DNA of 46,371 nt, taken from Octopus bimaculoides. Its lineage: Eukaryota. A program made the translations under genes and the position numbers. The notes under the pieces are model-generated. The model made no database searches. It saw only the letters and a program-made list of their open reading frames with translations, and had not been told where the DNA came from. Below are positions 2,034-44,149 of the stretch, piece after piece; position 1 is the first letter of the stretch, and each line of letters starts with the position of its first letter. The stretch lies in assembly GCF_001194135.2 (NCBI RefSeq), contig NC_069009.1, forward strand, positions 2,239,759 through 2,286,129. Reading direction: 5' to 3'.

Positions 2034-2105
2034 AGAACTGATAAACTGGAAAGATTTCGGAAGGTTTCAGCTTTGATTTTCGTAATTTTATTATCGTTCA
2101 AAGTT
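2034..2105 (-). CDS. LRR exon, class B: [24 protein letters not shown]
   Basis: 72 nt, ttccag| ... |gtaagt, open. Confidence 0.88.
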
Positions 2106-2544: not shown

Positions 2545-2620
<76 letters not shown>

Positions 2621-3652: not shown

Positions 3653-3718
<66 letters not shown>

Positions 3719-4191: not shown

Positions 4192-4243
<52 letters not shown>

Positions 4244-7200
4244 TCTTAGACATTCACAACGAATTGCATATTCCTGTGGAAAGCGACTGAGTGCATATAG
4301 TGCGTCAAGGAGAGTGAGAGAAAAAAGAGAGCATGGAAAGACATTAAATGTTTAGAACTATTGGGTTGTCCGGAAAGTTCGTGCCGATTTTTAAATGAAA
4401 GAAAAAGGTTAATAAATACTTGCCATTACATTTTTAATCAACCAAATATTAACCATTTGACGCACAATGCATCTCCATCTTTCCTTTAACTTCAAAATAC
4501 TCTCTTCCCAGAGTTGAGGTGGTTTCATGGTAAAGAATTCATCAAGGTATCTTTCTACGTCATCTAAGGAATTGAAATTTTTACCTTTAAGACTATTCTG
4601 CAGAGACATGAATAAGTGGAAATCCCAAGGAGCAATATCTGGTGAATATTGAGGGTGGGGTAAGACATCCCAACCGAGCTGCAGCAACTTTTGTCTGGTT
4701 CCCAAAGTAACGTGCGGTCTTGCATTATCATGCTGGAAAACAACACCCTTCCTGTTGGCCAATTCTGGACTTTTCTCTTGAATTGCTGCTTTTAACTCGT
4801 CCAGTTGTGTGCAGTATTTCTCAGAATTAATTGTCTAGTTGCTTGGGAGAAGCTCATAGTACAGAATTCCTTTCTAATCCCACCAGACACAAAGCCAAAC
4901 ATTTTTAGGGTAAAAACCCGCTTTTGGGGTAGCTAAGAGTGGCTTATGTCGCTTACTCCAGGATCACTTTCTCTGAACATTTCGGTAGATAATCCATTTC
5001 TCATCACCTGTCACAATTTGCTTTAAAAAAGGCGCATTTTCATTCCGTTTATAAAACGAATTACAGTGGAAATGCGATCCAAAAGGTTCTTTTCCCTTAA
5101 CGCATGTGGTACCCAAACATCGTATGATTTGTGTGCCGAAGTTTTACCAGGTGCTCATGAACGACGGATTTTGATAGGTTTANNNNNNNNNNNNNNNNNN
5201 NNNNNNNNNNNNNNNNNNNNNNNNNNNNNNNNNNNNNNNNNNNNNNNNNNNNNNNNNNNNNNNNNNNNNNNNNNNNNNNNNNNNNNNNNNNNNNNNNNNN
5301 NNNNNNNNNNNNNNNNNNNNNNNNNNNNNNNNNNNNNNNNNNNNNNNNNNNNNNNNNNNNNNNNNNNNNNNNNNNNNNNNNNNNNNNNNNNNNNNNNNNN
5401 NNNNNNNNNNNNNNNNNNNNNNNNNNNNNNNNNNNNNNNNNNNNNNNNNNNNNNNNNNNNNNNNNNNNNNNNNNNNNNNNNNNNNNNNNNNNNNNNNNNN
5501 NNNNNNNNNNNNNNNNNNNNNNNNNNNNNNNNNNNNNNNNNNNNNNNNNNNNNNNNNNNNNNNNNNNNNNNNNNNNNNNNNNNNNNNNNNNNNNNNNNNN
5601 NNNNNNNNNNNNNTACAATGTCCAGCCCGGAACCTTGCGAACCACTTCCGTACAGTCCTTTCGGATAAAGAAACATCACCCTAAACTGCCCATATTTCTT
5701 TGGTTGCTTGAGAGGCATTTTTCCCTTTACGGGAAAGGAAAAACATCTAGTGCCGAAAATGAACTTTCTTATCTTCCATTTTAAAGGGTTACAGAATTAA
5801 CACAGGTTATAGGAACATAAACCTTCTTCCACGAAAAAATAGCTTAAACTGTGCTCTAAATGGAAGTGTCGACAAATCCTATTTTATGGACTCAACCATG
5901 TTCAAACATAAGTCGAAAGGTAAGCTACTATAAATCGGCATGAACTTTCCGGACAACCCAATGAATAAAAGAGAATAAAAAAAAAAAATCCAACTTACAG
6001 AGACGTTAGACTCGGAAGATTCTGAATACATCCAACTTCCAATTCATTGATGTCATTATTAAGCAATTTTCTGTAACAAACAAGTGAACCGTGAAGAAAA
6101 AGAAGAGGAATAGGGGAAGAAGAAGAAGAGGAAAAATAAGAAAAAAGAAGAAGGAGGAGGAGAAGAAGAAGAAAAGAGAAAAACGGTGGAGAATTAGAAA
6201 AAAAACCCGGAAAAGTACAACAGCAACAAGAAAACAGAAGAAGCAGAAAAAGGAGCATAAGAAGAAGAAGAAGAAGAAGAAGAAGATAATAAAGAAGCAG
6301 ATGGATAAGGAAGAAGGAGAAGAAAAAGAAGATGAATAAGAGGTGGAGAATGGGAAGAAATAGGACGAGATGGTGGTGGAAGAAAGTGAAGAAGAAAAAG
6401 GAAAAGAAAAAGAAGAAAAAGAAGAAAGGAGAAAAAGAAGAACAATAACACATGTAAAGTATTTGTTTAAATGTTAGCGTATGGAACATCTGGGTTTGCN
6501 NNNNNNNNNCAGATATTGCAAGATATTACAGATTTAGAAAGACATCGTCAATGAAATAATAGATTGATTCAACTTACAGAGTTCTTAAACTGTAAAGGTT
6601 TTGGAAGCTTCCGGCTTTGATTTCTTCGATATTGTTTTTACTTAAATCCCTGGAGCGAAAAAATTGAGTTGAGAAGAACATTTATGGAACAAATGTGTGA
6701 GAGAATATTAAACAGTATGACTAAAGAATTGGAAGATAGAAGAGACGAAAAGTAGATTACGATATTGTTGATAATGTTGGGTTGGTATGGGTTGATGATT
6801 ATGATGGTAAGGCAGAGGGGAAGAAAATATGGTGGAAGAGTTTATGACGGAGGTGTTATGATGCTGATGATGGGGGTGATGTTGTTAAGGTTGATGATTC
6901 TGATAATGATGGGGATTAGAAGTTTTATTGTGGTGATGAACATGATGTTGATGTTGGTGGTGATGTTGTTTGTTGGTGATGAAGATGACCGTGTTGAAGA
7001 TTGTGTATCTGCAAATGAAGAAGATGAAAAAGAGAAAGAAGAAATGGAAGTGAAGAAGCGGAAGAAGAAAGAGAAGCAGAAGATGAAGATGAAGGAAATG
7101 AATGATGAGGAGAAGACGAATACGTAAAAGAAAGAAGAGTAGAAGAATGGGAGAGGTGGAAGAAGCATAAGGAGAAAAGGATAAGATAATGAAGAAGAAA

Positions 7201-10200
7201 TGGATGTAGAATAAAAGGAGGAAAAAGAAGAACAAAACATCAGCAGCAGTAGAAGAATAGAAGGGAAATGGACGATGAAGAAGAAGAAGAAGAAGAAGAA
7301 GAAGAAGAAGAAGAAGAAGAAGAAGAATCGGAGGGGGAAGAAGCATAGGGGGAATAAGAAGATTGAACGAAGAAGAATCATAAGGAGTTGAATAAGAAAA
7401 AAGTAAAAGAACAACGGAAATGAGAAGCAGAAGAAGAAGGAGGAGGAGNNNNNNNNNNNNNNNNNNNNNNNNNNNNNNNNNNNNNNNNNNNNNNNNNNNN
7501 NNNNNNNNNNNNNNNNNNNNNNNNNNNNNNNNNNNNNNNNNNNNNNNNNNNNNNNNNNNNNNNNNNNNNNNNNNNNNNNNNNNNNNNNNNNNNNNNNNNN
7601 NNNNNNNNNNNNNNNNNNNNNNNNNNNNNNNNNNNNNNNNNNNNNNNNNNNNNNNNNNNNNNNNNNNNNNNNNNNNNNNNNNNNNNNNNNNNNNNNNNNN
7701 NNNNNNNNNNNNNNNNNNNNNNNNNNNNNNNNNNNNNNNNNNNNNNNNNNNNNNNNNNNNNNNNNNNNNNNNNNNNNNNNNNNNNNNNNNNNNNNNNNNN
7801 NNNNNNNNNNNNNNNNNNNNNNNNNNNNNNNNNNNNNNNNNNNNNNNNNNNNNNNNNNNNNNNNNNNNNNNNNNNNNNNNNNNNNNNAGGAGGAGGAAGA
7901 AGAGGAAATGAAGAAAAGAAGTAAAAAAAAAATCAACAACAAGCAGAAGATGGAGGAGAAGCAGAAAGGAAGATAGATTGGTAGAAGAAGACGTTGAAGA
8001 TGAAGATGTTGATAATAAAGAAGAAGAAGAGGAAAGTGAATAAATAAAATAAAAACGGTTGGTGTAGGATGGGAAGGAGGAAAAGAAAATTTTGAATTAG
8101 AAGACGAATAGCTACAAGAGGAAGAAGAAGAAAAAGAGGAAAGAGAAAGAAAAAAGAAGGGGATGAAGGAGAATACGATAAAGAAGAGGAAAGTGAAAAA
8201 GAGGATGAAGAGAAGAAGAGTAAGAAGAAAGAAGAGAAGTACAAGAATGAGGACAATGGTGAGGGTAATGATGACGAGGATGAAGTCCTAAGATATTATG
8301 ATGGTGTCGATGGGGAGTGGAATTTCAGAGGACGGGAAGAAGAAGTAGACGAGGAAGAAGAAGGATAGAATAAGAAAGGCAACAACAACAAAAAAGAATG
8401 TTTTAATATTAGCGTATGAAACATCTAGGGCTAAATATACAACTACAAGAGTTATTCAAGAATGTTATTTAGTGTCTATATAAAGGTGAACACCATGCGT
8501 AATGTACACACGTGTTAATACACTCGTATATACTCATCTGTACACATTGACATGAACAAGCTTACACTAAACGCTTCCTCTTATGTATCAGGTTCCCATT
8601 TATCCAATATCTTAGAAATGGGGCCACACTCACATTCACAGACGTTCACGAACAATAAAACGCATGTATAGAAAGACGGTTGTAGAAGCTTAAATTGATG
8701 TACGGGAAGACATTACAGAATTATAAAGATATCGTCAACGAAATAATATAAAATAGAATTGATACAACTTACAGAGTTGTTAAACTGGAAAGATTTTGGA
8801 AAGTTCCAGCAATAATTTCTTTGATTTCGTTATCTCCCAAATTCCTGGAACATAGAATTGAGTTAAGAAGAACATTTATGGAAAACATTTGTGAGAGAAT
8901 ATTTAATATCATGTCTACAGAACTGGATGATAGAAGCGATGGACTGTAGAATTACTATCAAGATGAACCTCAAGATGTTGTTGATAATGTTGGATAGGTA
9001 TGGAAGCAGAAATGAATATGATGATGAGGCAGCGGAGAAGAAAATATTGTGGGCGTGTATATGACGAAGGTATTATGATGCTGATGATGGGGGTGATGTT
9101 GTTAATATTGATTACTATGATAATGATGGTGATTAGAAGTTTTATTGTGATGATGAACATGATATTTCTATTAATGCTGGTGTTGATGTCCTCTGTTGGT
9201 GACGAAGATTACGGTGTTGAAGATTGTGTATCTGGAAAGGAAGAAGAAGAAGAAGAAGAAGAAGAAGAAGAAGAAGAAGAAGAAGAAGAAGAAGAAGAAG
9301 AAGAAGAAGAAGAAGAAGAAGAAGAAGAGCAAGAACAATAACACCAGAAAATAAGAAGGGGCACAGGAGGAAATGATGCATTAGAAGGAAAAGAAGAAAC
9401 ATATTGTAGAGAAAGAGGAGAAAAGTGAGACTAAGGAAATATACAATTGGGTTAGGAGAAAAAGAAGACGTAGGTGAATTAGAAGAAGAAGAAAAAGAAG
9501 AAGAAGAAGTGCAACAAAAACAAGAATGAGAAAAGTAGAAAAAGTAGAAAATGAAGAAGCAGAACAGTAGATGAAGAATACGAAGAGGTTAAGTAGAGCA
9601 TCAAGAAGCAGAAGCAGGAAGAAAAGAAGGTTGTACATACCGATACATGTTTATATTTACACACACTCGTACTCACACATATGTATAGAAACTCTACAAA
9701 CACACATTTCTATCAAAGGGGTTTGAGAATGTAATGATAGAGAAGGATGGGACGCGAATGAAAATGGGAAGGTCCTAAATATTCAGTAATTTCAATGAAA
9801 TATTATCAACAATATTAATGCAACTTACAGATATTCTAAGCTGGTCAGACCTTCGAAGGATCCTACTTGAATTTTCTGGATTTTACTTTCATCCAAATTT
9901 TTATAACATAGAATTTTGTAAACGGGATTTATTGTAAAATATCATGAGTGAAATAACTTCGTGTAGGAAAAGAAAGCTAGATGAGTATGAATGTGATGAT
10001 AATATTAAAGAGGAGGAGGGGAGGAGGATTGAATTTCGAGGTGGTGGTGGTGGTGGTATGGATGACCATGAAGCAGAAACTAATGACAGGAGGACGGTGG
10101 TAGTGTTGATGAAGAAAATGGTGTTGCTGATGATGGCGATAAATTTTGTGATAACGGTGATGAGGAAGACATGTATCATGATGATGTTGATTATGATGAT

Positions 10201-13200
10201 GATGAATTTGGTGACAACTATGAAACTGGTGCTCTTTCTGTTGACGATGATAAAGAATATGTTGATGACGATAAGACTCAGGGTGTTGAAGATGGCGCAG
10301 ATAATTGTGATAATTGTAATGATGATGATGATATCGATGGTGGATACGAGGAGAATGTTTAAGGATAAAAGAATCAGAAGAAGTAGGAAAACCATGATGG
10401 GAAAGAAATTTGAGAGAAATGACTGGAAGAAGATTAAGTTTTGGAAGAAGCGTGTAAAGGAGGGGGAGGAGAATGCATAGAACAGGGAAAGAAGGTGATG
10501 GGGAGGGGGTTCAGGCACAAGTAAAAGGGCGGAGTAAGAGGAGAAGGAATAGAAGAACAACAAAAACAATAGCTACGAGTTTAACATGTTTTGGAGGACC
10601 AGGTATGTGAAAAATACAACCAGGTGAAGTGGGGGTGAGATCTAGATTAAGGACAAAATGGAGAAGGATGAGTAGAATATGAAGAATGGAATGACGGTAA
10701 TGAAGCATCAGAAATGATTTAGTAGAATTAAGAGAGGCGAAAGAAAAGAGAGATGAGGAAAAGGAGGAAATTAATGGAAGGAAAATAAAAAAGCGGGAAT
10801 AAAGACGGAAAAGTTGAAGAAGGAAAATGTAGAAGATGATGAAAACAAGAAGACGAGAAGGAAAGAAGAGGCAGAAGAAAAATACGAAGGAAAAGGAGAA
10901 GACGACGACAACGAAGAAGAAGAAGAAGAAGAAGAAGTGCAACAAAAACACCAAGAGTGTGAAAAGTAGAGAAACTAGAGAATGAAGTAGAACAGAAGAT
11001 GAAAAAGGAAAGCGAAGAAGGAGATTTAAAAGAAAAAGATGGAGATTAAATGACGACGAAAAAGAAGAGGGAGAAAAAGAAGAAGAATCAGAAGAAGAAA
11101 AAGAAGAAATAAAAGTAAATGTAGAAGATGGAGAAGAAAACCATAAAAGAGAAGAAGCAGAAGATGAGGAAAAGAAAGAAGCTGAAAACGTAGGGAAAGA
11201 AGGAGATGACGAAAAGAAGAAGCATATAACAAAGAGAATTAAAATGTCCCGAAAGCAACAATTACATCAAGAGGAAATGAAGAGAGAAAACATGAAGGAC
11301 AGAAATAGGAAGGGAAATTGATGGAGAAGGAGAAGGATAAATAGGAGGAGAAGAAGACCAATGAGAAGAAGAGGAACAATGAAAGAAAAATAAAGGGAGA
11401 AAAACAAGAACCGCTAAAGTTTATTTTAAGAAATAACGATACGGTTCATCTGGTGCAAAATATACATCTACAAGGGTCATTCAACGATGTTATTTAGCTT
11501 CGATCTACATTTAAACACCTTATGTAATATACATACATACACTCACAACCGTTCATCCATACAGATAGACATACACATGCATGCACTAAATGTTTCCCCT
11601 CAAGTATCACGCTCCCATATATCTCACATCTCAGAAAGGCCTCCAAATTCACATTCATTCACTAAATATAAATTGCATCTATACAAAGATATTACAGGTN
11701 NNNNNNNNNGTAGGTTGATTCAACTTACAGATTTGTTAAACTGGAAAGATTCCGGTAGGTTTCCGCCTTGATTTCTTTGATTTCATTACCGCGCAAATCC
11801 CTGGAACATAACATTGAGTTAATAAGATTTATGGAAGAAATTTGTGACTAAACAAATGGATGATGGAAGATGTGAAAGTAGATTATCATCAGGATGAATT
11901 TCATGAAGATGTTGTAAATAATGTTGGGTGGGATGGGGGCAGTGATGAGTATGGTAATGTGGCTGCGGGAGAGAAATAATTGTGGGAGTTTTGATGATGC
12001 TGATGATGGGGTGACACTGTAAACTTTGATCATTGTGAAAATGATGGAAATTTGGAGTCTTGGTTGTGATGATGAATATGATGTTGATGATGATGTTGTT
12101 GGTGATGTTTTCTGTTTGCGATGATGATAATGATGATTGCATTGCACTACATTGAAGAAGAAGAAGACGAAGACGAAGAAGAAGACGAAGACGAAGAAGA
12201 AGAAGAAGCAATAGAAAAAGAATTGTTACAAGAACAATCAATTACGCGTGATAATTTCTATTTTAAGATGAAAATATTCCGCAAAATATTTACAAAAATA
12301 TACGAAGTTAAACCCAGATGGAGACATTTAAAGGTGTTCCCCCTAACACCTCCACCAATTATAGTAATCGAAGCAATTGACCATCCCAAGACACCGAGAG
12401 TTAAGTCAACCATTTCTCTCTCGTTTTAGCCTATGAATATGGCCATATTAAGAGGAGGAAGTTTAAACTTTTGAGGCCTGGAATCAGGGTCGTCTGCCCA
12501 ATGACTTTGGGTCTTTAGAATTTGACGTTATTGCCGTCAGTGTGAACATAATTTCCAATATGTGTGCACTGGCTCCAATTCTCGACGACAATCAGATCTT
12601 TGCGTCTGTTACTCAGCCGGGAGTGGCGGGTGACATTTATATGCAGGAAGGACTTGTGTCCCGAGATAAATTTGGAGGAAATCTTTCGAACTTTGGGTGC
12701 ATTTTAGGGAGACCATAAAATACAGGTGTTCTTCTTTCTGACCTTGAAATCTTAGATTCAGCCTTATTAACGAAATTGCTTTCCTCCATGTTCAGAATTA
12801 TTTTGTCAAGTTCCTCTTAATAACAATAAAATCGCTATTAGCTAGACATCGGAGTGCGTAACGTTGGGAATTTGTGAGGTTATTCCAGGACTTCTTTCCA
12901 CTTGTTTTAAAGATTTTTCTAATGCCTGTCTGACAAGAGTCAAGAAATTCCAGTATTACTTGTGAACGTCCATCCCGAACTTTATCTGGATAGCAATTGA
13001 GATTCTTTTCAATCCAGTTATGCCAGATTCGACCATCATTATTTTTATTTTTAGTAAACAGAGTTTTCTGACTCCTCGTTACCAGTTTTTTTTCAAAAGA
13101 ATATTCTTTCAGCTTGTGGCGGCAGATAAACTGAAATAGCCCTTGAGCTAGTTTATTCTTGACGAAATTCTTTGTAAGTAAAGGAAAGCATGGAAAGACA

Positions 13201-28277: not shown

Positions 28278-28335
<58 letters not shown>

Positions 28336-34300: not shown

Positions 34301-36803
34301 CCTTGATTTCGTTATTACCCAATTTCCTGGAACATAAAATTGAGTTAAGAACATCTATGGAACAAATGTGTGAGAGAATATTTGATATTATGTCTACAGA
34401 ACTAGATANNNNNNNNNNNNNNNNNNNNNNNNNNNNNNNNNNNNNNNNNNNNNNNNNNNNNNNNNNNNNNNNNNNNNNNNNNNNNNNNNNNNNNNNNNNN
34501 NNNNNNNNNNNNNNNNNNNNNNNNNNNNNNNNNNNNNNNNNNNNNNNNNNNNNNNNNNNNNNNNNNNNNNNNNNNNNNNNNNNNNNNNNNNNNNNNNNNN
34601 NNNNNNNNNNNNNNNNNNNNNNNNNNNNNNNNNNNNNNNNNNNNNNNNNNNNNNNNNNNNNNNNNNNNNNNNNNNNNNNNNNNNNNNNNNNNNNNNNNNN
34701 NNNNNNNNNNNNNNNNNNNNNNNNNNNNNNNNNNNNNNNNNNNNNNNNNNNNNNNNNNNNNNNNNNNNNNNNNNNNNNNNNNNNNNNNNNNNNNNNNNNN
34801 NNNNNNNNNNNNNNNNNNNNNNNNNNNNNNNNNNNNNNNNNNNNNNNNNNNNNNNNNNNNNNNNNNNNNNNNNNNNNNNNNNNNNNNNNNNNNNNNNNNN
34901 NNNNNNNNNNNNNNNNNNNNNNNNNNNNNNNNNNNNNNNNNNNNNNNNNNNNNNNNNNNNNNNNNNNNNNNNNNNNNNNNNNNNNNNNNNNNNNNNNNNN
35001 NNNNNNNNNNNNNNNNNNNNNNNNNNNNNNNNNNNNNNNNNNNNNNNNNNNNNNNNNNNNNNNNNNNNNNNNNNNNNNNNNNNNNNNAGACAGTAGAGAA
35101 TTAGAAGGATATCCTCAATGAAATACTATCAAATAAGATTGATTCAACTTACAGAGTTGTTAAACTGGAAAGATTTTTGAAGGTTCCTGCTTGGATTTCC
35201 TTGATTTCGTTATTACCCAATTTCCTGGAACATAAAATTGAGTTAAGAACATCTATGGAACAAATGTGTGAGAGAATATTTGATATTATGTCTACAGAAC
35301 TAGATAATGGAAGAGATGGAATGTAGCTTACTATCATGACGAGGTTCTAGATGGTGTTGTGCAATGAGGGCAGTGACGAATATGAGGATGAGGCAGAGAA
35401 GAAATTAATGTGGGAGTAATGATGATGATGGTGATGATGAGGAGGATGAGGATGATATGATCCTGAAGATGGAGGATGATATGATCCTGAAGATGTCGAA
35501 CAGTTGTTGTCGCGTGTTGGATGGATCTGACTATCGGCGGAGTCAATAGTGAAGATCGACACGCCACCTGCCTTGGCCAGAAAGCGCAGCCAATGTTCCT
35601 CTGACTGGTAGCAGTAGCGAAGGAGTTTATGAGTTGGACCAGGTCGCAAGGCCTGAACACCGATTTTTCTCTTCCGCCAATCCCTCATCAACTTTTATAG
35701 AATTCTCTTTGAAAGAAGATGAAGCTGGAGAAAGAAGTGATGCCCCTAGTGCATTTTCAGAAATTACTGTCAGTTTATAAGGAAATGCATATTATTCCTG
35801 AGGCAATCGACAGATTGTATATTTTGTATATAGTGCGTCAACGAGAGTGAGGAAAAAAAGAAAGCATGGAAAGAGATTAAATGTTTAGGATTATATTGTC
35901 AATAAGAGAGAAAGAAAAAACTAATGAAACTTACAGAGTCGTTAAACTGGGAAGAGTTTGAAGAGATCCAACTTCTAATTCATTGATTTCATTATTATAC
36001 AACTCTCTGTAACAAAAAATAGGGAATAGTGAAAAAATGTATATAAGTTCGTAATGAAATATAAAATAGAACTACATGCAGTGAAAAGCATGTAAAAAAA
36101 TATGTAGAAGAGGAGGATAAAGTAGAAGTAGAAGTAGGAGGGAAATGATGTGGAGGAAGAGTAGTAGGAGGAGGGGGAGGAGGAGGAGGAGGAGGGGCGG
36201 AAGAAGTAAAAGAACAAAGTGGAGAAGAAATGGCAGAAAAGGAAGGACTACAACTACAGACGGGAAAAGAAGCAGAAAAAGACACATCTATAGAAAGACA
36301 TTACAGATTTAGAACGATATCCCCAAAGAAATACTATAAACGTAGGTTGATTCAACTTACAGATTTGTCAAACTGGAAAGATTTTCGAAGGTCCCTGCTT
36401 TGATTTTCTTAATTTCATTAACGTACAATTTCCTGGAATATAACATTAAGAACATTTATTGAACAAATTTGTGACTAAAGAATTGGATGATGGAAGAGAT
36501 GAAAAGTAGATTAACATCTTGAACTTTATAATGATGATGAGGATACTGTTGTGTGTGGTGGGGACTGTGATGAGAATGATGATGTGGCAGAGGAGAAGAA
36601 ATGATTGTGGGAGTGTATATGATGATGTTATGAGGATGATGATGGGGGTGATGTTAATTTTGATCCTTGTGAAAGTGATGAGGATTTTCTAGTTTTTGTT
36701 GTGATGAAGAATATGATATTGATGATGATGTTGGTGGAGAGGTTTTCTGTTGGTGATGATGTTGATGACGTTGGTGATTTTTCATGTGTAAAAGAAGAAG
36801 AAG

Positions 36804-36834
<31 letters not shown>

Positions 36835-37906
36835 CCTATGGTGTTTATTTTGTAATAGTTTTGTAGCTGTACTAGGCCTGTACCACCTTCTGTACGTTGC
36901 GCTGTATATATAACCTTTGTATGGCTGATGTTCAGTGGTGCATCCTAATTCCTGACATTATTTTCTTTGTTTTCTGTGTGTTTTGATTGGTTCATTCAGA
37001 ATCCAGTTAATGATACTGCAACTGAATCTTTTAGAGGAAGGAGGAGGAAGATGTAGTGGGAGAAGGAGGAGGAAAAGAAATGCTCAACAGAAAAGATCTT
37101 TCGCGTTTGGGAGTAAATGAAGAAGAAATAGAAAAGTGTAAAATAAATTACTCTGAGTATAAACATAAATAATGTCATTCACAATTTATAATTAGAACGG
37201 AAATCCATGAATGGTAATCAGCGTTCATCGAGATGTAAATATAATAAATAATATACAAAAGGATATACAAATGAAGTCGATACACTCGTATACATTCACT
37301 CAGACTGAAAAACACAGATTGACATATGCACATACATACACAAAATCATCTATATTAATTATAACAATACCACACAGTGATACTCACACAAACACACACT
37401 CACACACGTACTCCTTCTCAGACATTCACAAAGAATTGCATATTCCTGTGGAAAGCAACTGAATGTATATAGTGAGTCAAGGAGAGTGAGAGAAAAAAGA
37501 AAGCATGGGAAGACATTAAATGTTTATAATTATATTATGAATAAAAGAGAGTCAAAAACTAATGCGACTTACAGAGTTATTAGACTGGGAAGATTTTGAA
37601 AAGATCCAACTTCTAATTCATTGATAGCATTATTATTCAAAGTTCTGTAATAAAAAGTGAGACGTGAAAAAATGTATACAGGGTCGTAATGCAATATAAT
37701 GCCTAAAAATTTAGGCAAGTAATCGCTGATGATGACGGGGTTGATGATGATGTTGATTATGATGGTGGTGGTTGCTGTCGTGGTGATGGTGGTGGTTGCT
37801 GTCGTGGTGATGGTTGTGATAATTCGGAGGATGAGGATGATGGTGATATTGTTCATGTTGATACTCATGCTTATCATGGTGGTGATGATGATGATGATGA
37901 TGATGA

Positions 37907-37937
<31 letters not shown>

Positions 37938-39084: not shown

Positions 39085-39149
<65 letters not shown>

Positions 39150-39153
39150 TGTG

Positions 39154-39188
<35 letters not shown>

Positions 39189-39413: not shown

Positions 39414-39445
<32 letters not shown>

Positions 39446-42400
39446 GGTGGTGGTGGTGGTGGTGTTAGTAGTAGTAGTGGCAGCAGCAGCATTACCTGTA
39501 GTAGTAAAAAAAGAGAGAGGAAAGAAGAAGAGGCAGAACAAGAATATGACCAAGGAGAATAAGCGTATGAATCATCTGGCGCGAAACATAAGGGGTTTCG
39601 ATTCTCAATTAAACTCCGTGTGTAATACACATACATACACGCACATCCATAAATCCATACACAGAGACATACACAGAGACATACACAGAGACATACACAT
39701 GCATGCACTGAATGCCTCTCCTCAGGTATCACGCTCCTATATGCCTCACATCTCAGAAATGAGCCCACAATCATATTCACACACATTCACAAAATATGAA
39801 TTGCATCTATACAAAAGACATTACAGACTTAGAAAGATATCATCGACGAAATACTATAAACGTAGGTTGATTCAACTTACAGTATTATTAAACTGGAAAG
39901 ATTTCGGAAGGTTTCTGCTTTGATTTTCTTAATTTTATTACCGCTCAAACCCCTGGAACATAAAATTGAGTTAAGAACATTTATGGAAGAAATATGTGCC
40001 TAAACAATTGGATTATGGAAGAGATGAACAAATACGTTAATATCATGAGAGCTTCATGATGATGTTGTAAATAATATTGGGTAGTGATGAGTATGATGAT
40101 ATGGCAGAGTAAAAGAAATTACTGCGGGGCTGTTGATGATGATATTATGATGCTGATGATGGGGGTGATTTTGGTAATTTTGTTAATTGTGAAAATGATG
40201 CTGATTCGCAGTCCTTGTTGTGATGATGAATATGATAATGACGTTGAAGATTGTGTATATTTGAAATGATAATAATAATAAGAAGAAAACACGAAAAAGA
40301 ACAGGAGGATCAGATGAAGGAGAAGGTAAAGAAAAGGAAGACGAAGAAGAAGGAAGGGAAGAAGAATGAGGATAATGGTGAGGGTAATGATGACGAGGAT
40401 GAAGTCCTAAGATATTATGATGGTGTCGATGGGGAGTGGAATTTCAGAGGACGGGAAGAAGAAGTAGACGAGGAAGAAGAAGGATAGAATAAGAAAGGCA
40501 ACAACAACAAAAAAGAATGTTTTAATATTAGCGTATGAAACATCTAGGGCTAAATATACAACTACAAGAGTTATTCAAGAATGTTATTTAGTGTCTATAT
40601 AAAGGTGAACACCATGCGTAATGTACACACGTGTTAATACACTCGTATATACTCATCTGTACACATTGACATGCACAAGCTTACACTAAACGNNNNNNNN
40701 NNNNNNNNNNNNNNNNNNNNNNNNNNNNNNNNNNNNNNNNNNNNNNNNNNNNNNNNNNNNNNNNNNNNNNNNNNNNNNNNNNNNNNNNNNNNNNNNNNNN
40801 NNNNNNNNNNNNNNNNNNNNNNNNNNNNNNNNNNNNNNNNNNNNNNNNNNNNNNNNNNNNNNNNNNNNNNNNNNNNNNNNNNNNNNNNNNNNNNNNNNNN
40901 NNNNNNNNNNNNNNNNNNNNNNNNNNNNNNNNNNNNNNNNNNNNNNNNNNNNNNNNNNNNNNNNNNNNNNNNNNNNNNNNNNNNNNNNNNNNNNNNNNNN
41001 NNNNNNNNNNNNNNNNNNNNNNNNNNNNNNNNNNNNNNNNNNNNNNNNNNNNNNNNNNNNNNNNNNNNNNNNNNNNNNNNNNNNNNNNNNNNNNNNNNNN
41101 NNNNNNNNNNNNNNNNNNNNNNNNNNNNNNNNNNNNNNNNNNNNNNNNNNNNNNNNNNNNNNNNNNNNNNNNNNNNNNNNNNNNNNNNNNNNNNNNNNNN
41201 NNNNNNNNNNNNNNNNNNNNNNNNNNNNNNNNNNNNNNNNNNNNNNNNNNNNNNNNNNNNNNNNNNNNNNNNNNNNNNNNNNNNNNNNNNNNNNNNNNNN
41301 NNNNNNNNNNNNNNNNNNNNNNNNNNNNNNNNNNNNNNNNAGAAGAAGAAGAAGAAGAAGAAGAAGAAGAAGAAGAAGAAGAAGAAGAAGAAGAAGAAGA
41401 AGAAGAAGAAGAAGAAGAAGAAGAAGAAGAAGGATCGATGGCGGAAGAATCATAAGGAGAGAAATAGGATAGGATGAAGAAGAACCAGGAGGAGATGCAG
41501 AAAACAAAGAACAACAGCAACAACAAGCAAATGATGTAGAAGTAGAACAGAAGAAGAAGAAGAAGAAAAAGAAAAAAAGAAGTAGAACAGAAGAAGAAGA
41601 AGAAAAAGGAGAAATAGAAGAAAAGCCAGCAAAACAACTTGTAAAGAATTTGCTAAGCGTATGAGTCATCTGGGGGTTGAGGTAAACACCGTACGTAATA
41701 TATACACATGTTAATACACTTATCCATACACATAGACATAAAGCATAAATTAGAGGCTTCCCCTGAAGTATCACGCTCCTATATATATACTATATCTCAG
41801 AAAAACAATAAAAAGAATCTCTAGACACACGGGTGTGGGAGCTTAAATTAAAGTATGGGTAGACATGGCAGATTTAGAAAGACATTGTCAATGAAATAGT
41901 ATAAAAGAAGATTTATTCAACTTACAGAGTTGTTAAATTTGAAAGAATTTGGAAGGTTCCGGTTTCGATTTCTTTGATATTGTTTTTACTTAAATCCCTG
42001 GAGCGAAAAAATTGAGTTGAGAAGAACATTTATGGAACAAATGTGTGAGAGAATATTAAACATTATGACTAAAGAATTGGAAGATAGAAGAGACGAAAAG
42101 TATATTACGATATTTTCGATAATGTTGGTTAGGTGTAGGTTGAAGTAGCAGAAGTAGACGAAGAAAGAATTTGTTTCGATGTTAGCGTATGAATCATCTG
42201 GGGCTAAAAATAGGATGCTATTTAGCGTCTATCGAGGTAAACCATGTGTAATGTGACACACATGTTAATACACGCGTTTATACTCATTCGTACACATAGA
42301 CATACACAGGCATACACTAAATGCTTCCCCTCAAGTATGACACTCCCATATATCCCATATCTTACAAATGGACCCACACTCAAATTCACAGAATTTCACG

Positions 42401-44149
42401 AAAAATATGACGCAAATATAGAAAGACGATTGTGGGAGCTTAAATAGATGTACGGGAAGACATTATAGAAGTAGAAAAATATCGTCAGCGAAATAATATA
42501 AAATAAGATTGATTCAACTTACAGAATTGTTAAACTCGAAAGATTTTGAAAGGTTTCTGCATTGATTTCCAGAATATCGTTGTCACGTAAATCCCTGCAA
42601 TGTAAAATTGAATTAAGTAGAACATTTCAGGAACAAATGTGTCGGAGAATATGTAATATTTTGCCAAAAGAATTGGATGGTGGACGAGAGGAAATGTAGA
42701 TTACCATTATGATGAACTTCAGGAACAACAACTATAACAACAGTAACAGCAACAACAAGCAACAGTAGAAGAATAGAAAAGAAATGTTTGGTGAAGAAGA
42801 GGAGGAAAGAGAAGAAAAAGTATCGGAGTTGGAAGATGCATAAGGAGAAAAAGAAGATAGGATGAAGAAGAATCAGACGGAGATGAAGAAGGAAGATAAG
42901 AAAAGGAAAAACGACTGGAAACACAAGCAGAAGATGTTGAAGTAGAAAATAATAAGTCGTAGAAGAACAGGACGAAGGAAATGAAGGGGAATATATGAAA
43001 ATGTCTGGTGAAGAATGGGGAGGAGGAGAAAATGTTGAATAAGATGAGGAAAGAGTATAAGAGAAGAAGGAGTATAAGAGAAGAAGTAGAAGTAGAAAAT
43101 GAAGAAGAAGGGAAAGAAAAGTCGAATCAGATGAAGGAATATAAAGGAGAAAAAGATAAAGAAGAGGAAAGAGAAAAGAAGAATAAAAATAAGAATAGGA
43201 TGCAACAGAAGAAGTATAATACTCGCATCTTTACATCGATCGTTTTATTACCAAATTCACACTGACTATTCACATCCCTCGTCACCCGATTTCACATCGC
43301 CAACCTTTCTCCGACTGATTTCCTTATCAACTTCACACTGAATGCAGTCCCTCGTCACCTGACTTCACACCAACTGTTCACATCGCATCTCATCGCCAAA
43401 TCGTCTCATCACCCAGCTCTGATCGCCAACTTTCACAAAGCCTATCTCTCTTCACCCAAATCTCATTGTCAACTGACCGATGCCATGCGTTCCATTGCCA
43501 GTTTAAATTGCCTCACAATAAAAACACAAAAGGAACGTGTAACATACTTTAAACTAGTCACATGATCATGAACATTATTTCTCATTACAATGAATTACGA
43601 TCCATTCTTGGTTTATTTTGTAGAACTATAGAACATTATTTCGATTAGTACCATTTAAAATTATATTATTCAAACTAATTCCGCCATTCTATACTCTCCT
43701 TCATAACAACAATATATGCAATACTTTTTGCTAACAACAGCAGTTTTCACACATTCCGTTCCCTGAAAAGTTCAGATACTGGTGTACAATACTGTAAGTT
43801 ATAGATTCCACATAAAAACAGTGAACGCTGGGTAATATATTGGCCACTTTTTACTCTAACATGTTTTAAAGCTGAGATCAACAACACAAGTTATTAGTCC
43901 AGAACATAAACAACAAGAATTTAAAACTTGGAATGTGGAAAATACGTAGAAAAGGTCGAATACTTACAGACGCGTAACATTCGGCGGAATAGATTGTGGG
44001 ACCGAAGTCAGTCCCCGAGATGAACAATCTATTTTTTCTTGAGAATATGTACAGCTACATATGCTGCAAACGTCTGACGCAGCATGTGACTCCAAACATA
44101 ATCTCATAAAGAGAACCAACACAAAAGTCAATTTGAATTGTTGGAACAT
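2034..44149 (-). CDS. Multi-exon extracellular leucine-rich-repeat protein: signal peptide + LRRNT + at least 28 24-aa LRRs; 3' end lies outside the window (below position 1)
   Basis: A 182-nt first coding exon ends in phase 2. It is followed by 28 intact 72-nt exons, each with AG/GT sites and no stop, which join in frame (CT|A or CT|G = Leu) to give xLxxNxIxxI/LxxxxFxxLxxLxxL repeats (at least 732 aa). No stop codon, LRRCT or TM domain is seen in the window. Confidence 0.88.
2373..2820 (+). mobile_element. tRNA-derived SINE (octopus-type) with internal (AT)n(GT)n
   Basis: A-box-like tggctgtgtgg, B-box-like ggttcagtccc, cttgggcaagtgtcttctactatagcc core and a short repeated tail (agtaaaag)2. 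Recognised as an abundant octopus SINE from memory, not by search. Confidence 0.8.
2940..3660 (+). mobile_element. L1/Tx1-like LINE ORF2 3' end with AATAAA and (ATT)n tail
   Basis: Decayed zinc-finger region (DKL..HGS...[16 protein letters not shown]), then gtggccaataaatgaaattattatt. Confidence 0.55.
4197..4241. repeat. (CA)n microsatellite
   Basis: Direct reading. Confidence 0.95.
4361..5961 (-). mobile_element. Mariner DNA transposon with both TIRs and a disrupted transposase; internal gap
   Basis: 30-bp TIRs ttgggttgtccggaaagttc(g/a)tgccgattt at 4361-4390 and 5932-5961 (1 mismatch); TA at the left end. ORF 4409-4762 contains FQHDNARPH and [16 protein letters not shown]. Confidence 0.92.
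5999..6070 (-). CDS. LRR exon, class A: [24 protein letters not shown]
   Basis: 72 nt, ttacag| ... |gtaagt, open. Confidence 0.88.
6578..6649 (-). CDS. LRR exon, class B: [24 protein letters not shown]
   Basis: 72 nt, ctccag| ... |gtaagt, open. Confidence 0.88.
8773..8844 (-). CDS. LRR exon, class B: [24 protein letters not shown]
   Basis: 72 nt, ttccag| ... |gtaagt, open. Confidence 0.88.
9241..9328. repeat. (GAA)n microsatellite; others at about 7279-7326, 33438-33508 and 41341-41431
   Basis: Direct reading. Confidence 0.95.
9829..9900 (-). pseudogene. Divergent LRR exon with non-canonical acceptor: [24 protein letters not shown]
   Basis: 72 nt, open, perfect |gtaagttg donor. The acceptor reads ttctatgttataa| where paralogues have ttctatgttccag|. 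Confidence 0.7.
11729..11800 (-). CDS. LRR exon, class B: [24 protein letters not shown]
   Basis: 72 nt, ttccag| ... |gtaagt, open. Confidence 0.88.
12300..13165 (-). mobile_element. Penelope-like element fragments (RT N-terminus and GIY-YIG-like tail)
   Basis: Minus translation [24 protein letters not shown] and [12 protein letters not shown] (Penelope FYGLPKxH motif); internally deleted. Confidence 0.65.
13259..13330 (-). CDS. LRR exon, class A: [24 protein letters not shown]
   Basis: 72 nt, ttacag| ... |gtaagt, open. Confidence 0.88.
14063..14134 (-). pseudogene. Degenerate LRR exon with dead donor: [24 protein letters not shown]
   Basis: Good acceptor (ttcttgtctttcag|) and exactly 72 nt of open LRR-like frame, but the donor reads |ctaatt instead of |gtaagt. 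Several consensus residues are altered. Confidence 0.7.
14835..15850 (-). mobile_element. 3' fragment of an RLE-type (R4/Dong-like) LINE
   Basis: Minus translation [28 protein letters not shown] (restriction-like endonuclease region) and [11 protein letters not shown]; decayed. Confidence 0.75.
16138..16209 (-). CDS. LRR exon, class A: [24 protein letters not shown]
   Basis: 72 nt with intact sites; one nt different from 13259-13330. Confidence 0.85.
16597..16668 (-). CDS. LRR exon, class B: [24 protein letters not shown]
   Basis: 72 nt, tttcag| ... |gtaagt, open. Confidence 0.88.
16915..16986 (-). CDS. LRR exon, class B: [24 protein letters not shown]
   Basis: 72 nt, ttccag| ... |gtaagt, open. 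Confidence 0.88.
17110..17500 (-). mobile_element. Related Penelope-like fragment
   Basis: Shares ccaattctcgacgacaatcagat..ttgcgtctgt with about 12575-12610. Confidence 0.45.
17520..18490 (+). mobile_element. L1/Tx1-like LINE fragments (ORF2 pieces and 3' end)
   Basis: ORFs 17521-17874 and 17881-18141 ([13 protein letters not shown]); 3' end homologous to 3340-3650 and 24470-24780. Confidence 0.55.
19276..19347 (-). CDS. LRR exon, class A: [24 protein letters not shown]
   Basis: 72 nt, ttacag| ... |gtaagt, open. Confidence 0.88.
20717..20788 (-). CDS. LRR exon, class B: [24 protein letters not shown]
   Basis: 72 nt, ttccag| ... |gtaagt, open. Confidence 0.88.
21130..21990 (+). mobile_element. 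Decayed LINE ORF1-like fragment
   Basis: Complex, non-microsatellite ORFs 21325-21735 and 21573-21854; ccggagtggatctg.agatattt is shared with 24413-24440; absent from the paralogous intron 31958-32703. Confidence 0.4.
22255..22326 (-). CDS. LRR exon, class A: [24 protein letters not shown]
   Basis: 72 nt, ctacag| ... |gtaagt, open. Confidence 0.88.
22983..23054 (-). CDS. LRR exon, class B: [24 protein letters not shown]
   Basis: 72 nt, tttcag| ... |gtaagt, open. Confidence 0.88.
23300..23371 (-). CDS. LRR exon, class B: [24 protein letters not shown]
   Basis: 72 nt, ttccag| ... |gtaagt, open. Confidence 0.88.
23979..24050 (-). CDS. LRR exon, class B: [24 protein letters not shown]
   Basis: 72 nt, ttccag| ... 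|gtaagt, open. Confidence 0.88.
24805..26326 (-). mobile_element. Internally deleted R4/Dong-clade non-LTR retrotransposon flanked by (TAA)n
   Basis: [49 protein letters not shown] and [11 protein letters not shown] (RT), fused to the C-terminal [19 protein letters not shown] and 3' UTR; frameshifted. Confidence 0.85.
26652..26723 (-). CDS. LRR exon, class A: [24 protein letters not shown]
   Basis: 72 nt, ttacag| ... |gtaagt, open. Confidence 0.88.
26900..27375. repeat. Minisatellite, 5 copies of an 87-96-nt unit
   Basis: ggtgttcgtgttgaagatgaggctgatgctggtggtagtgg at about 26927, 27022, 27109, 27196 and 27292, separated by variable (GGT)n(GAT)n. Confidence 0.9.
27811..27882 (-). CDS. LRR exon, class B: [24 protein letters not shown]
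   Basis: 72 nt, tttcag| ... |gtaagt, open. Confidence 0.88.
28670..29480 (-). mobile_element. 3' fragment of the same RLE-type LINE family, ending in (TAA)n
   Basis: [15 protein letters not shown] and [23 protein letters not shown]; 3' end runs into (TAA)n at about 28600-28668. Confidence 0.75.
29505..29760 (+). mobile_element. L1/Tx1-like fragment, also present at 35495-35760
   Basis: gtcgaacagttgttgtcgcgtgttggatggatctgactatc... is near-identical in both copies and homologous to 17890-18130. Confidence 0.55.
29893..29964 (-). CDS. LRR exon, class A: [24 protein letters not shown]
   Basis: 72 nt, ttacag| ... GT|gtaagt (junction codon Val instead of Leu), open. Confidence 0.85.
30540..30890 (-). 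mobile_element. Mariner transposase N-terminal HTH fragment
   Basis: ORF 30616-30924: [19 protein letters not shown]...[16 protein letters not shown], a Mos1-like HTH. Confidence 0.8.
30890..31095 (-). mobile_element. Second SINE family, partial, reverse orientation
   Basis: Reverse complement aggcggcgatctagcagaatcc...ctttcatcctttcttggtcgattaaataagtaccagttatgcactggggtcgatgtaat matches a common cephalopod SINE body as I recall it. Confidence 0.7.
31887..31958 (-). CDS. LRR exon, class B: [24 protein letters not shown]
   Basis: 72 nt with intact sites; one nt different from 20717-20788. Confidence 0.88.
32703..32764 (-). other. Gap-truncated copy of the class A exon at 33139-33210
   Basis: 32557-32764 repeats 32993-33200 across gap 32765-32992; probably an assembly overlap. 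Confidence 0.6.
33139..33210 (-). CDS. LRR exon, class A: [24 protein letters not shown]
   Basis: 72 nt, ctacag| ... |gtaagt, open. Confidence 0.88.
33938..34009 (-). CDS. LRR exon, class B: [24 protein letters not shown]
   Basis: 72 nt, tttcag| ... |gtaagt, open. Confidence 0.88.
34255..34326 (-). CDS. LRR exon, class B: [24 protein letters not shown]
   Basis: 72 nt, ttccag| ... |gtaagt, open; same peptide as 23300-23371. Confidence 0.85.
35153..35224 (-). CDS. LRR exon, class B: [24 protein letters not shown] (one of an identical pair flanking gap 34409-35087)
   Basis: 72 nt with intact sites. 35088-35306 repeats 34190-34408 across the gap, so one copy may be an assembly overlap. Confidence 0.6.
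35935..36006 (-). CDS. LRR exon, class A: [24 protein letters not shown]
   Basis: 72 nt, ttacag| ... |gtaagt, open. Confidence 0.88.
36361..36432 (-). CDS. LRR exon, class B: [24 protein letters not shown]
   Basis: 72 nt, ttccag| ... |gtaagt, open. Confidence 0.88.
37573..37644 (-). CDS. LRR exon, class A: [24 protein letters not shown]
   Basis: 72 nt, ttacag| ... |gtaagt, open. Confidence 0.88.
39085..39188. repeat. (TAG)n microsatellite; others at about 3655-3718, 18575-18618, 22409-22459 and 28281-28333
   Basis: Direct reading. Confidence 0.95.
39881..39952 (-). CDS. LRR exon, class B: [24 protein letters not shown]
   Basis: 72 nt, ttccag| ... |gtaagt, open. Confidence 0.88.
41926..41997 (-). 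CDS. LRR exon, class B: [24 protein letters not shown]
   Basis: 72 nt, ctccag| ... |gtaagt, open; paralogue of 6578-6649. Confidence 0.88.
42523..42594 (-). CDS. LRR exon, class B: [24 protein letters not shown]
   Basis: 72 nt, ttgcag| ... |gtaagt, open frame. Confidence 0.88.
43968..44149 (-). CDS. First coding exon: signal peptide + LRRNT cap ([61 protein letters not shown])
   Basis: Hydrophobic N-terminus; CxxCxC...[16 protein letters not shown] is a classic LRRNT. Donor CT|gtaagt at 43968/43967. Upstream acceptor ttcttttacag| at 44169 implies a 5' UTR exon further upstream that I could not locate. Confidence 0.92.

What the first reader, a model, noticed from the sequence alone, without database searches (positions are those of the whole stretch)
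2034..42594. Variation concentrates at concave-face (ligand-contact) LRR positions and is mostly non-synonymous
Seen: exon codons 1, 3, 4, 6, 22 and 23 (the x positions of LxxLxLxxNx) vary widely (e.g. DLRDND, GLSGNK, KLYVNE, ELSVNY, KFAGNF, DFNENA, ELSSNN), while the class B 3' half ttc.gaaatctttccagtttaacaactct is nearly invariant, even at silent sites. By hand: 22983 vs 33938 differ at 4 nt, all replacement (S4V, N6Y, G16R). 22983 vs 16597 differ at 5 nt, all replacement (codons 1, 3, 4). 22255 vs 33139 differ at 6 nt, 4 replacement (codons 1, 4, 22, 23). Known: these positions form the antigen-binding surface of VLRs and plant LRR receptors. Inference: diversifying selection on a binding surface.
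Basis: partly seen in the sequence, partly recalled or inferred. Interest (0 to 1): 0.82.

Follow-up and report, generated by a model that had tools for sequence, protein, structure and literature searches.

The report
Hypervariable single-LRR exon array, octopus-type gene
The window holds most of a cephalopod-type gene made of one signal-peptide exon and at least 28 near-identical 72-base exons, each coding one leucine-rich repeat. The exposed residues of the inner (ligand-facing) surface change faster than silent sites and introns, so natural selection appears to have favoured new binding surfaces.

Summary
On the minus strand there is a signal-peptide/LRRNT exon (43967-44149). It is followed by 29 intact-looking 72-nt, phase-1 exons, each coding one 24-residue LRR.

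Two assembly gaps are flanked by exact duplicates. Exon 35153 is therefore the same exon as 34255, and the truncated copy at 32702-32764 is exon 33139. That leaves 28 unique exons, plus two decayed pseudo-exons.

Non-synonymous rates are highest at codons 1, 3, 4 and 6. Codons 22 and 23 are weaker, and codons 8 and 16 also vary.

- **Codon likelihood fits:** omega is about 1.9-2.0 at the six concave codons, 0.6 at convex x positions and 0.18 at scaffold positions. The test of omega = 1 at the concave codons gives p = 0.0004-0.03.
- **Against introns:** concave replacement changes run at 1.85x the intron rate (2.5x in class B, and a non-significant 1.3x in class A). None of 200 neutral simulations reached the observed value.
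- **Silent sites:** they evolve at the intron rate, so the "silent-site invariance" only reflects how recently the copies arose.

The closest relatives are Octopus sinensis LRR genes with the same exon design, whose annotated isoforms differ by single LRR exons. The closest described analogue is the 72-bp LRR exon arrays of brown-alga ROCO genes. Combinatorial splicing of the array is plausible but not shown.

The parts
43967..44149 (-). Exon 1. ATG, signal peptide and LRRNT cysteine cluster ([61 protein letters not shown]). It ends ...CT|gtaagt, the same phase as the LRR exons.
   Evidence: tblastn with P0001 residues 1-59: 62% identity, E = 4e-17. Sequence read. Pfam LRRNT hit is weak.
42523..42594 (-). 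LRR exon, class B: [23 protein letters not shown]
41926..41997 (-). LRR exon, class B (DLSKNN subtype): [23 protein letters not shown]
39881..39952 (-). LRR exon, class B: [23 protein letters not shown]
37573..37644 (-). LRR exon, class A: [23 protein letters not shown]
36361..36432 (-). LRR exon, class B: [23 protein letters not shown]
35935..36006 (-). LRR exon, class A: [23 protein letters not shown]
35153..35224 (-). Assembly duplicate of exon 34255-34326, not a separate exon
   Evidence: 34190-34408 is 100% identical to 35088-35306 across gap 34409-35087
34255..34326 (-). LRR exon, class B: [23 protein letters not shown]. Identical at nucleotide level to exon 23300.
33938..34009 (-). LRR exon, class B: [23 protein letters not shown]
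33139..33210 (-). LRR exon, class A: [23 protein letters not shown]
32702..32764 (-). Truncated assembly duplicate of exon 33139, abutting a gap
   Evidence: 32557-32764 is 100% identical to 32993-33200 across gap 32765-32992
31887..31958 (-). LRR exon, class B: [23 protein letters not shown]
29893..29964 (-). LRR exon, class A: [23 protein letters not shown]. It ends GT rather than CT, so the split codon codes Val.
27811..27882 (-). LRR exon, class B: [23 protein letters not shown]
26652..26723 (-). LRR exon, class A: [23 protein letters not shown]
23979..24050 (-). LRR exon, class B: [23 protein letters not shown]
23300..23371 (-). LRR exon, class B: [23 protein letters not shown]
22983..23054 (-). 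LRR exon, class B: [23 protein letters not shown]
22255..22326 (-). LRR exon, class A: [23 protein letters not shown]
20717..20788 (-). LRR exon, class B: [23 protein letters not shown]
19276..19347 (-). LRR exon, class A: [23 protein letters not shown]
16915..16986 (-). LRR exon, class B: [23 protein letters not shown]
16597..16668 (-). LRR exon, class B: [23 protein letters not shown]
16138..16209 (-). LRR exon, class A: [23 protein letters not shown]. It lies inside a 237-nt patch that is 99.2% identical to the 13259 unit.
14061..14134 (-). Decayed LRR pseudo-exon ([24 protein letters not shown]). It has an acceptor but no GT donor, and is 2 nt longer than the intact exons.
   Evidence: nhmmer E = 1.6e-6; sequence read
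13259..13330 (-). LRR exon, class A: [23 protein letters not shown]
11729..11800 (-). LRR exon, class B: [23 protein letters not shown]. It lies 20 nt from gap 11700-11709 and is itself intact.
9829..9900 (-). Decayed LRR pseudo-exon ([23 protein letters not shown]). The acceptor AG has mutated to AA; the gtaagttg donor is kept.
   Evidence: nhmmer E = 3.7e-8; sequence read
8773..8844 (-). LRR exon, class B: [23 protein letters not shown]
6578..6649 (-). LRR exon, class B (DLSKNN subtype): [23 protein letters not shown]
5999..6070 (-). LRR exon, class A: [23 protein letters not shown]
2034..2105 (-). LRR exon, class B: [23 protein letters not shown]. It is the last LRR exon in the window; the gene continues beyond the low end.
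   Evidence: No LRRCT or C-terminal match in 1-2033.

Best explanation
**What is shown.** This is the body of a conventional, spliced, cephalopod (Octopus-type) gene for a secreted or surface extracellular LRR protein.
- One exon codes the signal peptide and the LRRNT cap.
- At least 28 tandemly duplicated 72-nt, phase-1 exons follow, all on the minus strand. Each codes exactly one 24-residue 'typical' LRR.
- The array grew by duplication of single exons and of multi-exon blocks. One ~11-kb five-exon block is present twice, and a three-exon part of it a third time.
- There are occasional short gene-conversion patches, and some exons have decayed (two pseudo-exons).
- Scaffold residues (L2, N5, I7, I10, A/V12, F15, L18, L21) are held by purifying selection.
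- The exposed x positions of the LxxLxLxxNx beta-strand segment have accumulated replacement changes faster than silent sites and introns. This applies above all to codons 1, 3, 4 and 6, less to 22 and 23, and mainly to class B exons.

**What is inferred.**
- These positions line the concave face of the solenoid. Selection has therefore diversified a ligand-contact surface, repeat by repeat.
- Every exon, including exon 1, ends in the same phase, so any subset splices in frame. The array could be read as one very long solenoid. It could also be read, as annotated single-LRR-skipping isoforms of the O. sinensis relative suggest, as a set of cassette exons giving different binding surfaces.
For: **Architecture.**

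**Duplication blocks and conversion patch.**

**Selection.**
- Omega is 1.86-1.99 at the concave codons and 0.42-0.45 elsewhere.
- Beta/alpha is 2.2-2.8 at the concave codons, 0.6 at convex x positions and 0.18 at core positions.
- Positions 1+2 of the concave codons evolve at 1.4-1.6x the intron rate under HKY.
- On intron-calibrated trees dN(concave) is 1.85x intron (all exons) and 2.54x (class B), with dS about 0.9-1.0x intron.
- None of 200 neutral simulations reached the observed value.
- Independent pairs and the block-duplication contrast agree.

**Conservation profile.** Nucleotides 7-12 of class B exons are the least conserved stretch of the 372-nt unit examined (exon plus 150 nt of intron on each side): pairwise identity is 0.39, no higher than in any flanking intron bin. 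It is tied by one distal intron bin (-143..-138, also 0.39); all other intron bins are 0.43 or higher.

**Relatives.**
- O. sinensis P0001 (51% identity) and P0121-P0124 (58-66% identity).
- Locus L001 has the same 72-nt exon design and repeats the variability pattern.
- Isoforms X1, X2 and X3 differ by single 24-aa units.

**Fold.** The AF2 model of P0001 has pLDDT > 96 over the LRR part, with strands every 24 residues at codons 23-24-1. The best PDB matches are LRIG1, LRRTM2, chondroadherin, LGR4, NgR and NGL-3.
Against: - No individual codon reaches significance.
- Class A exons alone show only 1.27x the intron rate, which is not significant.
- The analysis used my own likelihood code on NJ topologies. 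There was no PAML or HyPhy and no formal recombination model, although a gene-conversion patch exists.
- The introns used as a neutral yardstick lie within 120 nt of the exons and are partly constrained. The near-splice part runs at about 0.5x the distal part.
- The window protein itself could not be modelled, and model coordinates are not returned. Mapping to the concave face therefore rests on strand positions in a homologue plus textbook LRR geometry.
- There is no transcript evidence for this locus.
- The 3' end of the gene lies outside the window.
- The draft assembly contains 13 gaps and at least three gap-flanking duplications.
Confidence: 0.72

Rival explanations
1. Relaxed constraint only. 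The x positions of the beta-strand are simply free to drift after each exon duplication, as in any LRR protein. Their variability then reflects neutrality rather than selection for new specificities.
For: - Class A exons give dN(concave)/K(intron) = 1.27, not different from 1.
- No single site is significant.
- The intron yardstick near exons is partly constrained, which could inflate the ratios.
- More distal intron aligns at only about 0.5 identity.
Against: - Pooled omega at the concave codons is significantly above 1 on three trees.
- It also exceeds dS from the same exons, which does not depend on introns. In independent pairs the ratio is 1.60, p = 0.02.
- Class B reaches 2.54x intron, and 0 of 200 neutral simulations reach the observed value.
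- Convex x positions, which are equally exposed, have omega of only about 0.6.
Confidence: 0.15
2. A local mutational or templated process, rather than selection, produces the cluster of changes in the first 20 nt of the exons. Candidates are a hot spot, multi-nucleotide mutations, or micro gene conversion between exons.
For: - Several recent pairs differ by two adjacent bases within a codon, for example TCT/GTT, TCC/AAC and TCT/GGT.
- A 237-nt conversion-like patch exists.
- Some codon states recur in non-sister exons, for example GTT at codon 4 of 33938 and 36361.
Against: - The synonymous rate at the concave codons is not raised: 0.44-0.96 of the intron rate.
- The synonymous rate of codons 1-8 equals that of codons 9-23.
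- Codons 2, 5 and 7, which are interleaved with the hot codons, are conserved at the protein level.
- A hot spot or a conversion tract would not skip every second codon.
Confidence: 0.08
3. Assembly artefact. The apparent exon diversity arises from mis-assembled or collapsed repeats and haplotype mixtures in a gapped draft, not from a real array.
For: - The window has 13 gaps.
- Three gaps are flanked by exact duplications, which create one spurious complete exon and one spurious partial exon.
Against: - The remaining 28 exons each differ from one another (only 23300 and 34255 are identical) and sit in diverged introns with 5-48% divergence.
- Variation is codon-structured: scaffold omega is 0.16-0.18 and the frame is open over all exons.
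- A gap-free O. sinensis contig has the same design.
Confidence: 0.03

Closest known systems
Octopus sinensis 'leucine-rich repeat-containing protein 15-like' (P0001), 'protein 4-like isoforms X1-X3' (P0121, P0124, P0122) and 'SLIT and NTRK-like 4 isoform X4' (P0072); O. vulgaris hypothetical protein P0129
   Same: - Signal peptide and LRRNT exon are 62-66% identical.
- The 24-residue repeats have a conserved convex half and variable xLxLxxNx positions.
- In locus L001 the exons are likewise 72 nt, with the same ttccag...gtaagttg borders.
- GC content is about 36% in both.
   Different: - Identity is only 51-66%, so this is a paralogue or another species.
- The annotated models use 4-10 LRRs, whereas this window has 28 intact exons in 40 kb.
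- Their LRRCT-like and C-terminal domains are not in the window.
Brown-alga LRR-ROCO genes (Ectocarpus, Saccharina; PMC11378527, citing Zambounis et al. 2012)
   Same: - One LRR per 72-bp in-phase exon.
- Arrays of up to dozens of shuffled or duplicated exons.
- Four positively selected sites on the concave face.
- Splice variants with different LRR content.
   Different: - The algal exons are phase 2, not phase 1.
- The algal proteins are intracellular ROC-COR GTPases from a stramenopile. This one is an animal protein with a signal peptide and an LRRNT cap.
- There is no sequence relationship beyond the LRR motif.
Variable lymphocyte receptors (VLR) of lampreys and hagfish
   Same: - LRR modules of 24 residues.
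- Diversity is concentrated at the concave beta-strand positions.
- Many germline copies lie at one locus.
   Different: - VLR cassettes are non-spliced fragments copied somatically into an incomplete gene by a gene-conversion-like process.
- Here every unit has canonical splice sites, one orientation and one reading phase behind a normal first exon. Nothing here indicates somatic assembly.
Dscam1 alternative exon clusters of arthropods
   Same: Tandem arrays of duplicated exons whose products differ at a recognition surface, giving potential for many isoforms from one gene.
   Different: - Dscam exons code half Ig domains and are spliced mutually exclusively through docking and selector RNA pairing.
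- Here no donor-flank/acceptor-flank complementarity beyond shuffled controls was found.
- LRR exons could be used additively.
LGR / glycoprotein-hormone receptors and Slit
   Same: Animal extracellular LRR domains built from exons of about 72 bp, one per repeat. LGR4 is among the best structural matches.
   Different: Those are short, old, conserved arrays without near-identical recent duplicates or hypervariable positions.

Membership tests
Typical extracellular LRR proteins (LRRNT-capped, 24-residue repeats) | Tandem repeats matching LxxLxLxxNxL with a period of about 24 | tested here: met
   Pfam LRR_8 E = 1e-47, LRR_4 E = 2e-20. There are 28 in-register 24-residue units.
Typical extracellular LRR proteins (LRRNT-capped, 24-residue repeats) | N-terminal signal peptide and cysteine-rich LRRNT cap | tested here: inconclusive
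   A hydrophobic N-terminus and a CxxCxC...C cluster can be read directly in exon 1. Pfam LRRNT scores 19.7 bits, below the 25.8 cut-off. The exon is homologous to the P0001 N-terminus. No signal-peptide predictor was available.
Typical extracellular LRR proteins (LRRNT-capped, 24-residue repeats) | Curved solenoid with a beta-sheet on the concave face | tested here: met
   Tested on the homologue P0001 only. pLDDT is above 96, with strands every 24 residues. Foldseek top hits are LRIG1, LRRTM2, chondroadherin and LGR4.
Octopus LRRC15-like / LRRC4-like family (P0001, P0121) | Homologous first exon and 72-nt single-LRR exons with the same splice borders | tested here: met
Octopus LRRC15-like / LRRC4-like family (P0001, P0121) | LRRCT-like Cys motif and C-terminal domain (…KDQIFKQVSETFKTSQ…) | not testable with these tools
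   No match in window 1-2033. The gene runs off the window.
VLR-type somatically assembled LRR receptors | Incomplete germline gene flanked by cassettes that lack splice sites and lie in mixed orientation | tested here: not met
   All 28 units have AG...GT borders, one strand and one phase, behind a complete first exon.
Dscam-type mutually exclusive exon clusters | Docking/selector complementary intron elements | tested here: not met
   Duplex energies of consensus donor-side versus acceptor-side intron flanks are no better than shuffles, with z from -0.5 to +0.8. Only 70-78 nt of consensus flank was tested.
Brown-alga LRR-ROCO exon-shuffled genes | 72-bp in-phase exon per LRR, with positively selected concave sites | tested here: met
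   The phase differs: 1 here, 2 in the algae (PMC11378527).
Brown-alga LRR-ROCO exon-shuffled genes | ROC-COR GTPase domains downstream of the LRRs; cytosolic protein | not testable with these tools
   The 3' end of the gene is outside the window. The signal peptide and LRRNT exon argue against membership.
LRR-containing adhesion GPCRs (octopus-specific expansion, PMC6408891) | GPS motif and 7tm_2 domain after the LRRs | not testable with these tools
   This is a lead only. An LRR+GPS+7tm_2 gene overlaps the P0001 locus in O. sinensis. Nothing of the kind is in the window.

The most novel reading that the evidence does not exclude
Octopods may carry germline arrays of dozens of interchangeable single-LRR cassette exons, each with its own positively selected concave-face residues. 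Combinatorial exon inclusion would then turn these arrays into a repertoire of LRR recognition proteins. Such a system would sit between Dscam (splicing diversity) and VLR (LRR modules), and could serve immune or neuronal/chemotactile recognition.

The evidence is compatible with this reading but does not show it:
- All exons share one phase.
- The intron flanks next to the splice sites are conserved.
- Annotated isoforms of the O. sinensis relative differ by single LRR exons.
- A 461-aa O. sinensis model spans 229 kb.
Probability: 0.25. Interest if true: 0.85.

Novelty: new variant of a known kind. Interest (0 to 1): 0.6.

Why it matters
Diversifying selection on the concave face of LRR domains marks recognition molecules that must keep up with changing ligands. 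Known examples are plant R proteins, VLRs, TLRs and brown-alga ROCOs.

Finding it in an animal gene built from at least 28 recently duplicated, freely recombinable one-repeat exons points to an undescribed way in which cephalopods might enlarge a recognition repertoire. Cephalopods have no adaptive immunity but are known for lineage-specific expansions of adhesion and recognition genes. Five literature searches turned up no description of such arrays in cephalopods.

If the exons are used combinatorially, the locus would be a new example of splicing-generated receptor diversity. If they are all used together, it would be one of the longest uninterrupted LRR solenoids. Long-read transcriptomes can distinguish the two.

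Tried and rejected
1. **Motif regex.** A protein-motif regex for LRR exons was too noisy, because the motif is split across exon borders. I replaced it with an AG-72-GT scan and an nhmmer profile.
2. **First likelihood run.** The full joint optimisation timed out. It was rerun in stages.
3. **Silent-site constraint in the 3' half.** Rejected. The synonymous rate is equal in both halves of the exon and equals the intron rate.
4. **Dscam-like docking/selector pairing** between conserved donor-side and acceptor-side intron flanks. No complementarity beyond shuffles.
5. **VLR-like cassettes.** Rejected, because every unit is a normal exon.
6. **Modelling the window's own spliced protein.** The homologue P0001 was modelled instead, and coordinates are not returned, so side-chain direction could not be computed.
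7. **Fetching larger Octopus loci for a replicate test.** The P0001 gene range is too long. P0072, P0123 and P0129 are not on record. Only the 36-kb locus L001 was obtained.
8. **Family search with the P0001 C-terminal domain.** It returned a single O. vulgaris protein.
9. **Literature searches** for cephalopod LRR exon arrays found none.

Full report
**What is in the window.** The window is AT-rich (about 36% GC), rich in microsatellites, and contains 13 runs of N.

On the minus strand, a scan for AG-72 nt-GT units with an open frame found 29 exons of exactly 72 nt between 2034 and 42594, and an nhmmer profile confirmed them. All have ttccag or ttacag acceptors and gtaagttg donors. Each exon ends with CT, which joins the first base of the next exon to form a Leu codon (phase 1). 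One exon therefore equals one 24-residue LRR. The concatenated frame is open for 695 residues.

Two exon classes alternate:
- **Class A:** [23 protein letters not shown].
- **Class B:** xLxxNxI(K/M)[15 protein letters not shown].

Upstream, at 43967-44149, an exon starts with ATG and codes a hydrophobic signal sequence and a CxxCxC...C LRRNT cluster. It ends in the same phase. It is 62% identical to residues 1-59 of Octopus sinensis P0001 (E = 4e-17). No LRRCT or C-terminal domain lies in 1-2033, so the gene leaves the window at its low end.

**Gaps, tested first as requested.** No exon touches a gap. The nearest is exon 11729, 20 nt from a 10-N gap.

Three gaps are flanked by exact duplications:
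- 32557-32764 equals 32993-33200 (208 nt).
- 34190-34408 equals 35088-35306 (219 nt).
- 25840-25894 equals 25905-25959 (55 nt).

These are unmerged contig overlaps. Exon 35153 is therefore exon 34255 assembled twice, and the truncated exon at 32702-32764 is exon 33139. All statistics below use the 28 unique exons. Because every exon is an in-frame module, gaps cannot break the frame, though they could hide further exons.

**How the array evolved.**
- *Pseudo-exons.* Two decayed copies exist. In 9829-9900 the acceptor AG has become AA. In 14061-14134 there is no GT donor.
- *Block duplication.* Self-comparison shows block duplications at 73-94% identity. One five-exon block is present twice: exons 34255, 33938, 33139, 31887 and 29893 correspond to 23300, 22983, 22255, 20717 and 19276.
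- *Gene conversion.* A sharply bounded 237-nt patch is 99.2% identical between the 13259 and 16138 units, which looks like gene conversion.

Amino-acid entropy is highest at codons 4, 6, 3, 8 and 1, followed by 16, 11, 22 and 23. Per-site non-synonymous rates are highest at codons 1, 3, 4 and 6, then 22. The chance that the top four all fall among the six canonical x positions is 0.0017.

In class B, nucleotides 7-12 of the exon are the least conserved stretch of the 372-nt unit examined (exon plus 150 nt of intron each side). Mean pairwise identity there is 0.39, no higher than in any flanking intron bin. One distal intron bin (-143..-138) ties it at 0.39, and every other intron bin is 0.43 or higher.

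**Is this selection?** I wrote a GY94 (F3x4) likelihood program and fitted it to 28 exons x 23 codons on three NJ topologies: exon only, intron only, and both.

*Codon models.*
- A single omega is 0.78-0.86.
- Splitting the codons gives omega = 1.86-1.99 for codons 1, 3, 4, 6, 22 and 23, and 0.42-0.45 for the rest.
- Forcing the concave omega to 1 costs 2dlnL = 8.6-11.1, a one-sided p of 0.0004-0.002.
- Giving each partition its own synonymous rate yields beta/alpha of 2.2-2.8 for concave codons (p = 0.005-0.03), 0.6 for convex x positions and 0.18 for scaffold positions.
- Synonymous rates are equal in the two halves of the exon.

*Flanking introns as an independent yardstick.*
- Positions 1+2 of the concave codons evolve at 1.4-1.6x the intron rate.
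- On intron-calibrated trees dS is 0.91x intron and concave dN is 1.85x intron (p = 5e-6).
- By class, concave dN is 2.54x intron in class B (p = 3e-8) and 1.27x in class A (not significant).
- None of 200 neutral simulations reached the observed values.

*Tests that do not depend on a tree.*
- Fourteen phylogenetically independent sister pairs, a comparison robust to recombination, give dN(concave)/dS = 1.60 (p = 0.02), dN(concave)/K(intron) = 1.65 (p = 0.0008) and dS/K(intron) = 1.03.
- In the same-age five-exon block, 11 of 30 concave codons are replaced, against 5 of 85 others (p = 0.0001).

*What this rules in and out.*
- The synonymous rate at the concave codons is not raised, and the conserved codons 2, 5 and 7 are interleaved with the hot ones. 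A mutational hot spot or a conversion tract is therefore a poor explanation.
- Silent sites in the 3' half are not slower than introns (0.80-1.02).

**Caveats.**
- No single codon is significant.
- The introns used lie within 120 nt of the exons. Their near-splice part is constrained, at about 0.5x the distal rate.
- The likelihood code is my own. PAML, HyPhy and GARD were not available.

- The LRR part has pLDDT above 96.
- DSSP strands recur every 24 residues at the positions equivalent to codons 23-24-1.
- The best PDB matches are LRIG1, LRRTM2, chondroadherin, LGR4, Nogo receptor, NGL-3, FLRT and a VLR fusion.

From established LRR geometry, the x residues of LxxLxLxxNx are the exposed residues of the concave sheet and its ascending edge. 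Coordinates were not returned, so I could not measure side-chain orientation.

**Relatives.**
- The best protein hits are O. sinensis 'LRRC15-like' P0001 (51% identity) and 'SLITRK4-like' P0072.
- For the N-terminus, the best hits are O. sinensis 'LRRC4-like' isoforms X1, X2 and X3 (up to 66% identity).
- Those three isoforms differ only by the presence or absence of single 24-residue units, that is, by skipping of single LRR exons.
- Their 36-kb contig (L001, 35.9% GC) has the same 72-nt exons and borders, including three copies without donors. It repeats the variability pattern: 38 replaced and 0 silent codon differences at the six concave codons, against 22 replaced and 14 silent at the other 17.
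- The P0001 gene model spans 229 kb for 461 residues and overlaps an LRR+GPS+7tm_2 gene.

The window is therefore from a cephalopod, probably an octopod. The species was not determined.

**Comparison with what is known.**
- The closest described analogue is the LRR-ROCO genes of brown algae. They have 72-bp in-phase exons with one LRR each, exon shuffling, four positively selected concave sites and splice variants (PMC11378527). They differ in exon phase and protein context: they are cytosolic ROC-COR GTPases.
- VLRs share the module and the hypervariable positions, but not the mechanism. Here every unit is a normal exon.
- Dscam shares the idea of an exon array, but I found no docking-type complementarity.
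- LGR and Slit genes share 72-bp LRR exons, but not the recent amplification or the hypervariability.
- An octopus-specific expansion of adhesion GPCRs, some with LRR N-termini, is known (PMC6408891). An 'lrrc15' gene marks a neuron cluster in the O. bimaculoides optic lobe (PMC9815951). Both are leads only.
- Five literature searches found no description of cephalopod LRR exon arrays.

**Verdict.** It comes mainly from class B exons and from codons 1, 3, 4 and 6. Whether the array is read as one long solenoid or combinatorially is open. I rate the finding a new variant of a known kind, with interest 0.6.

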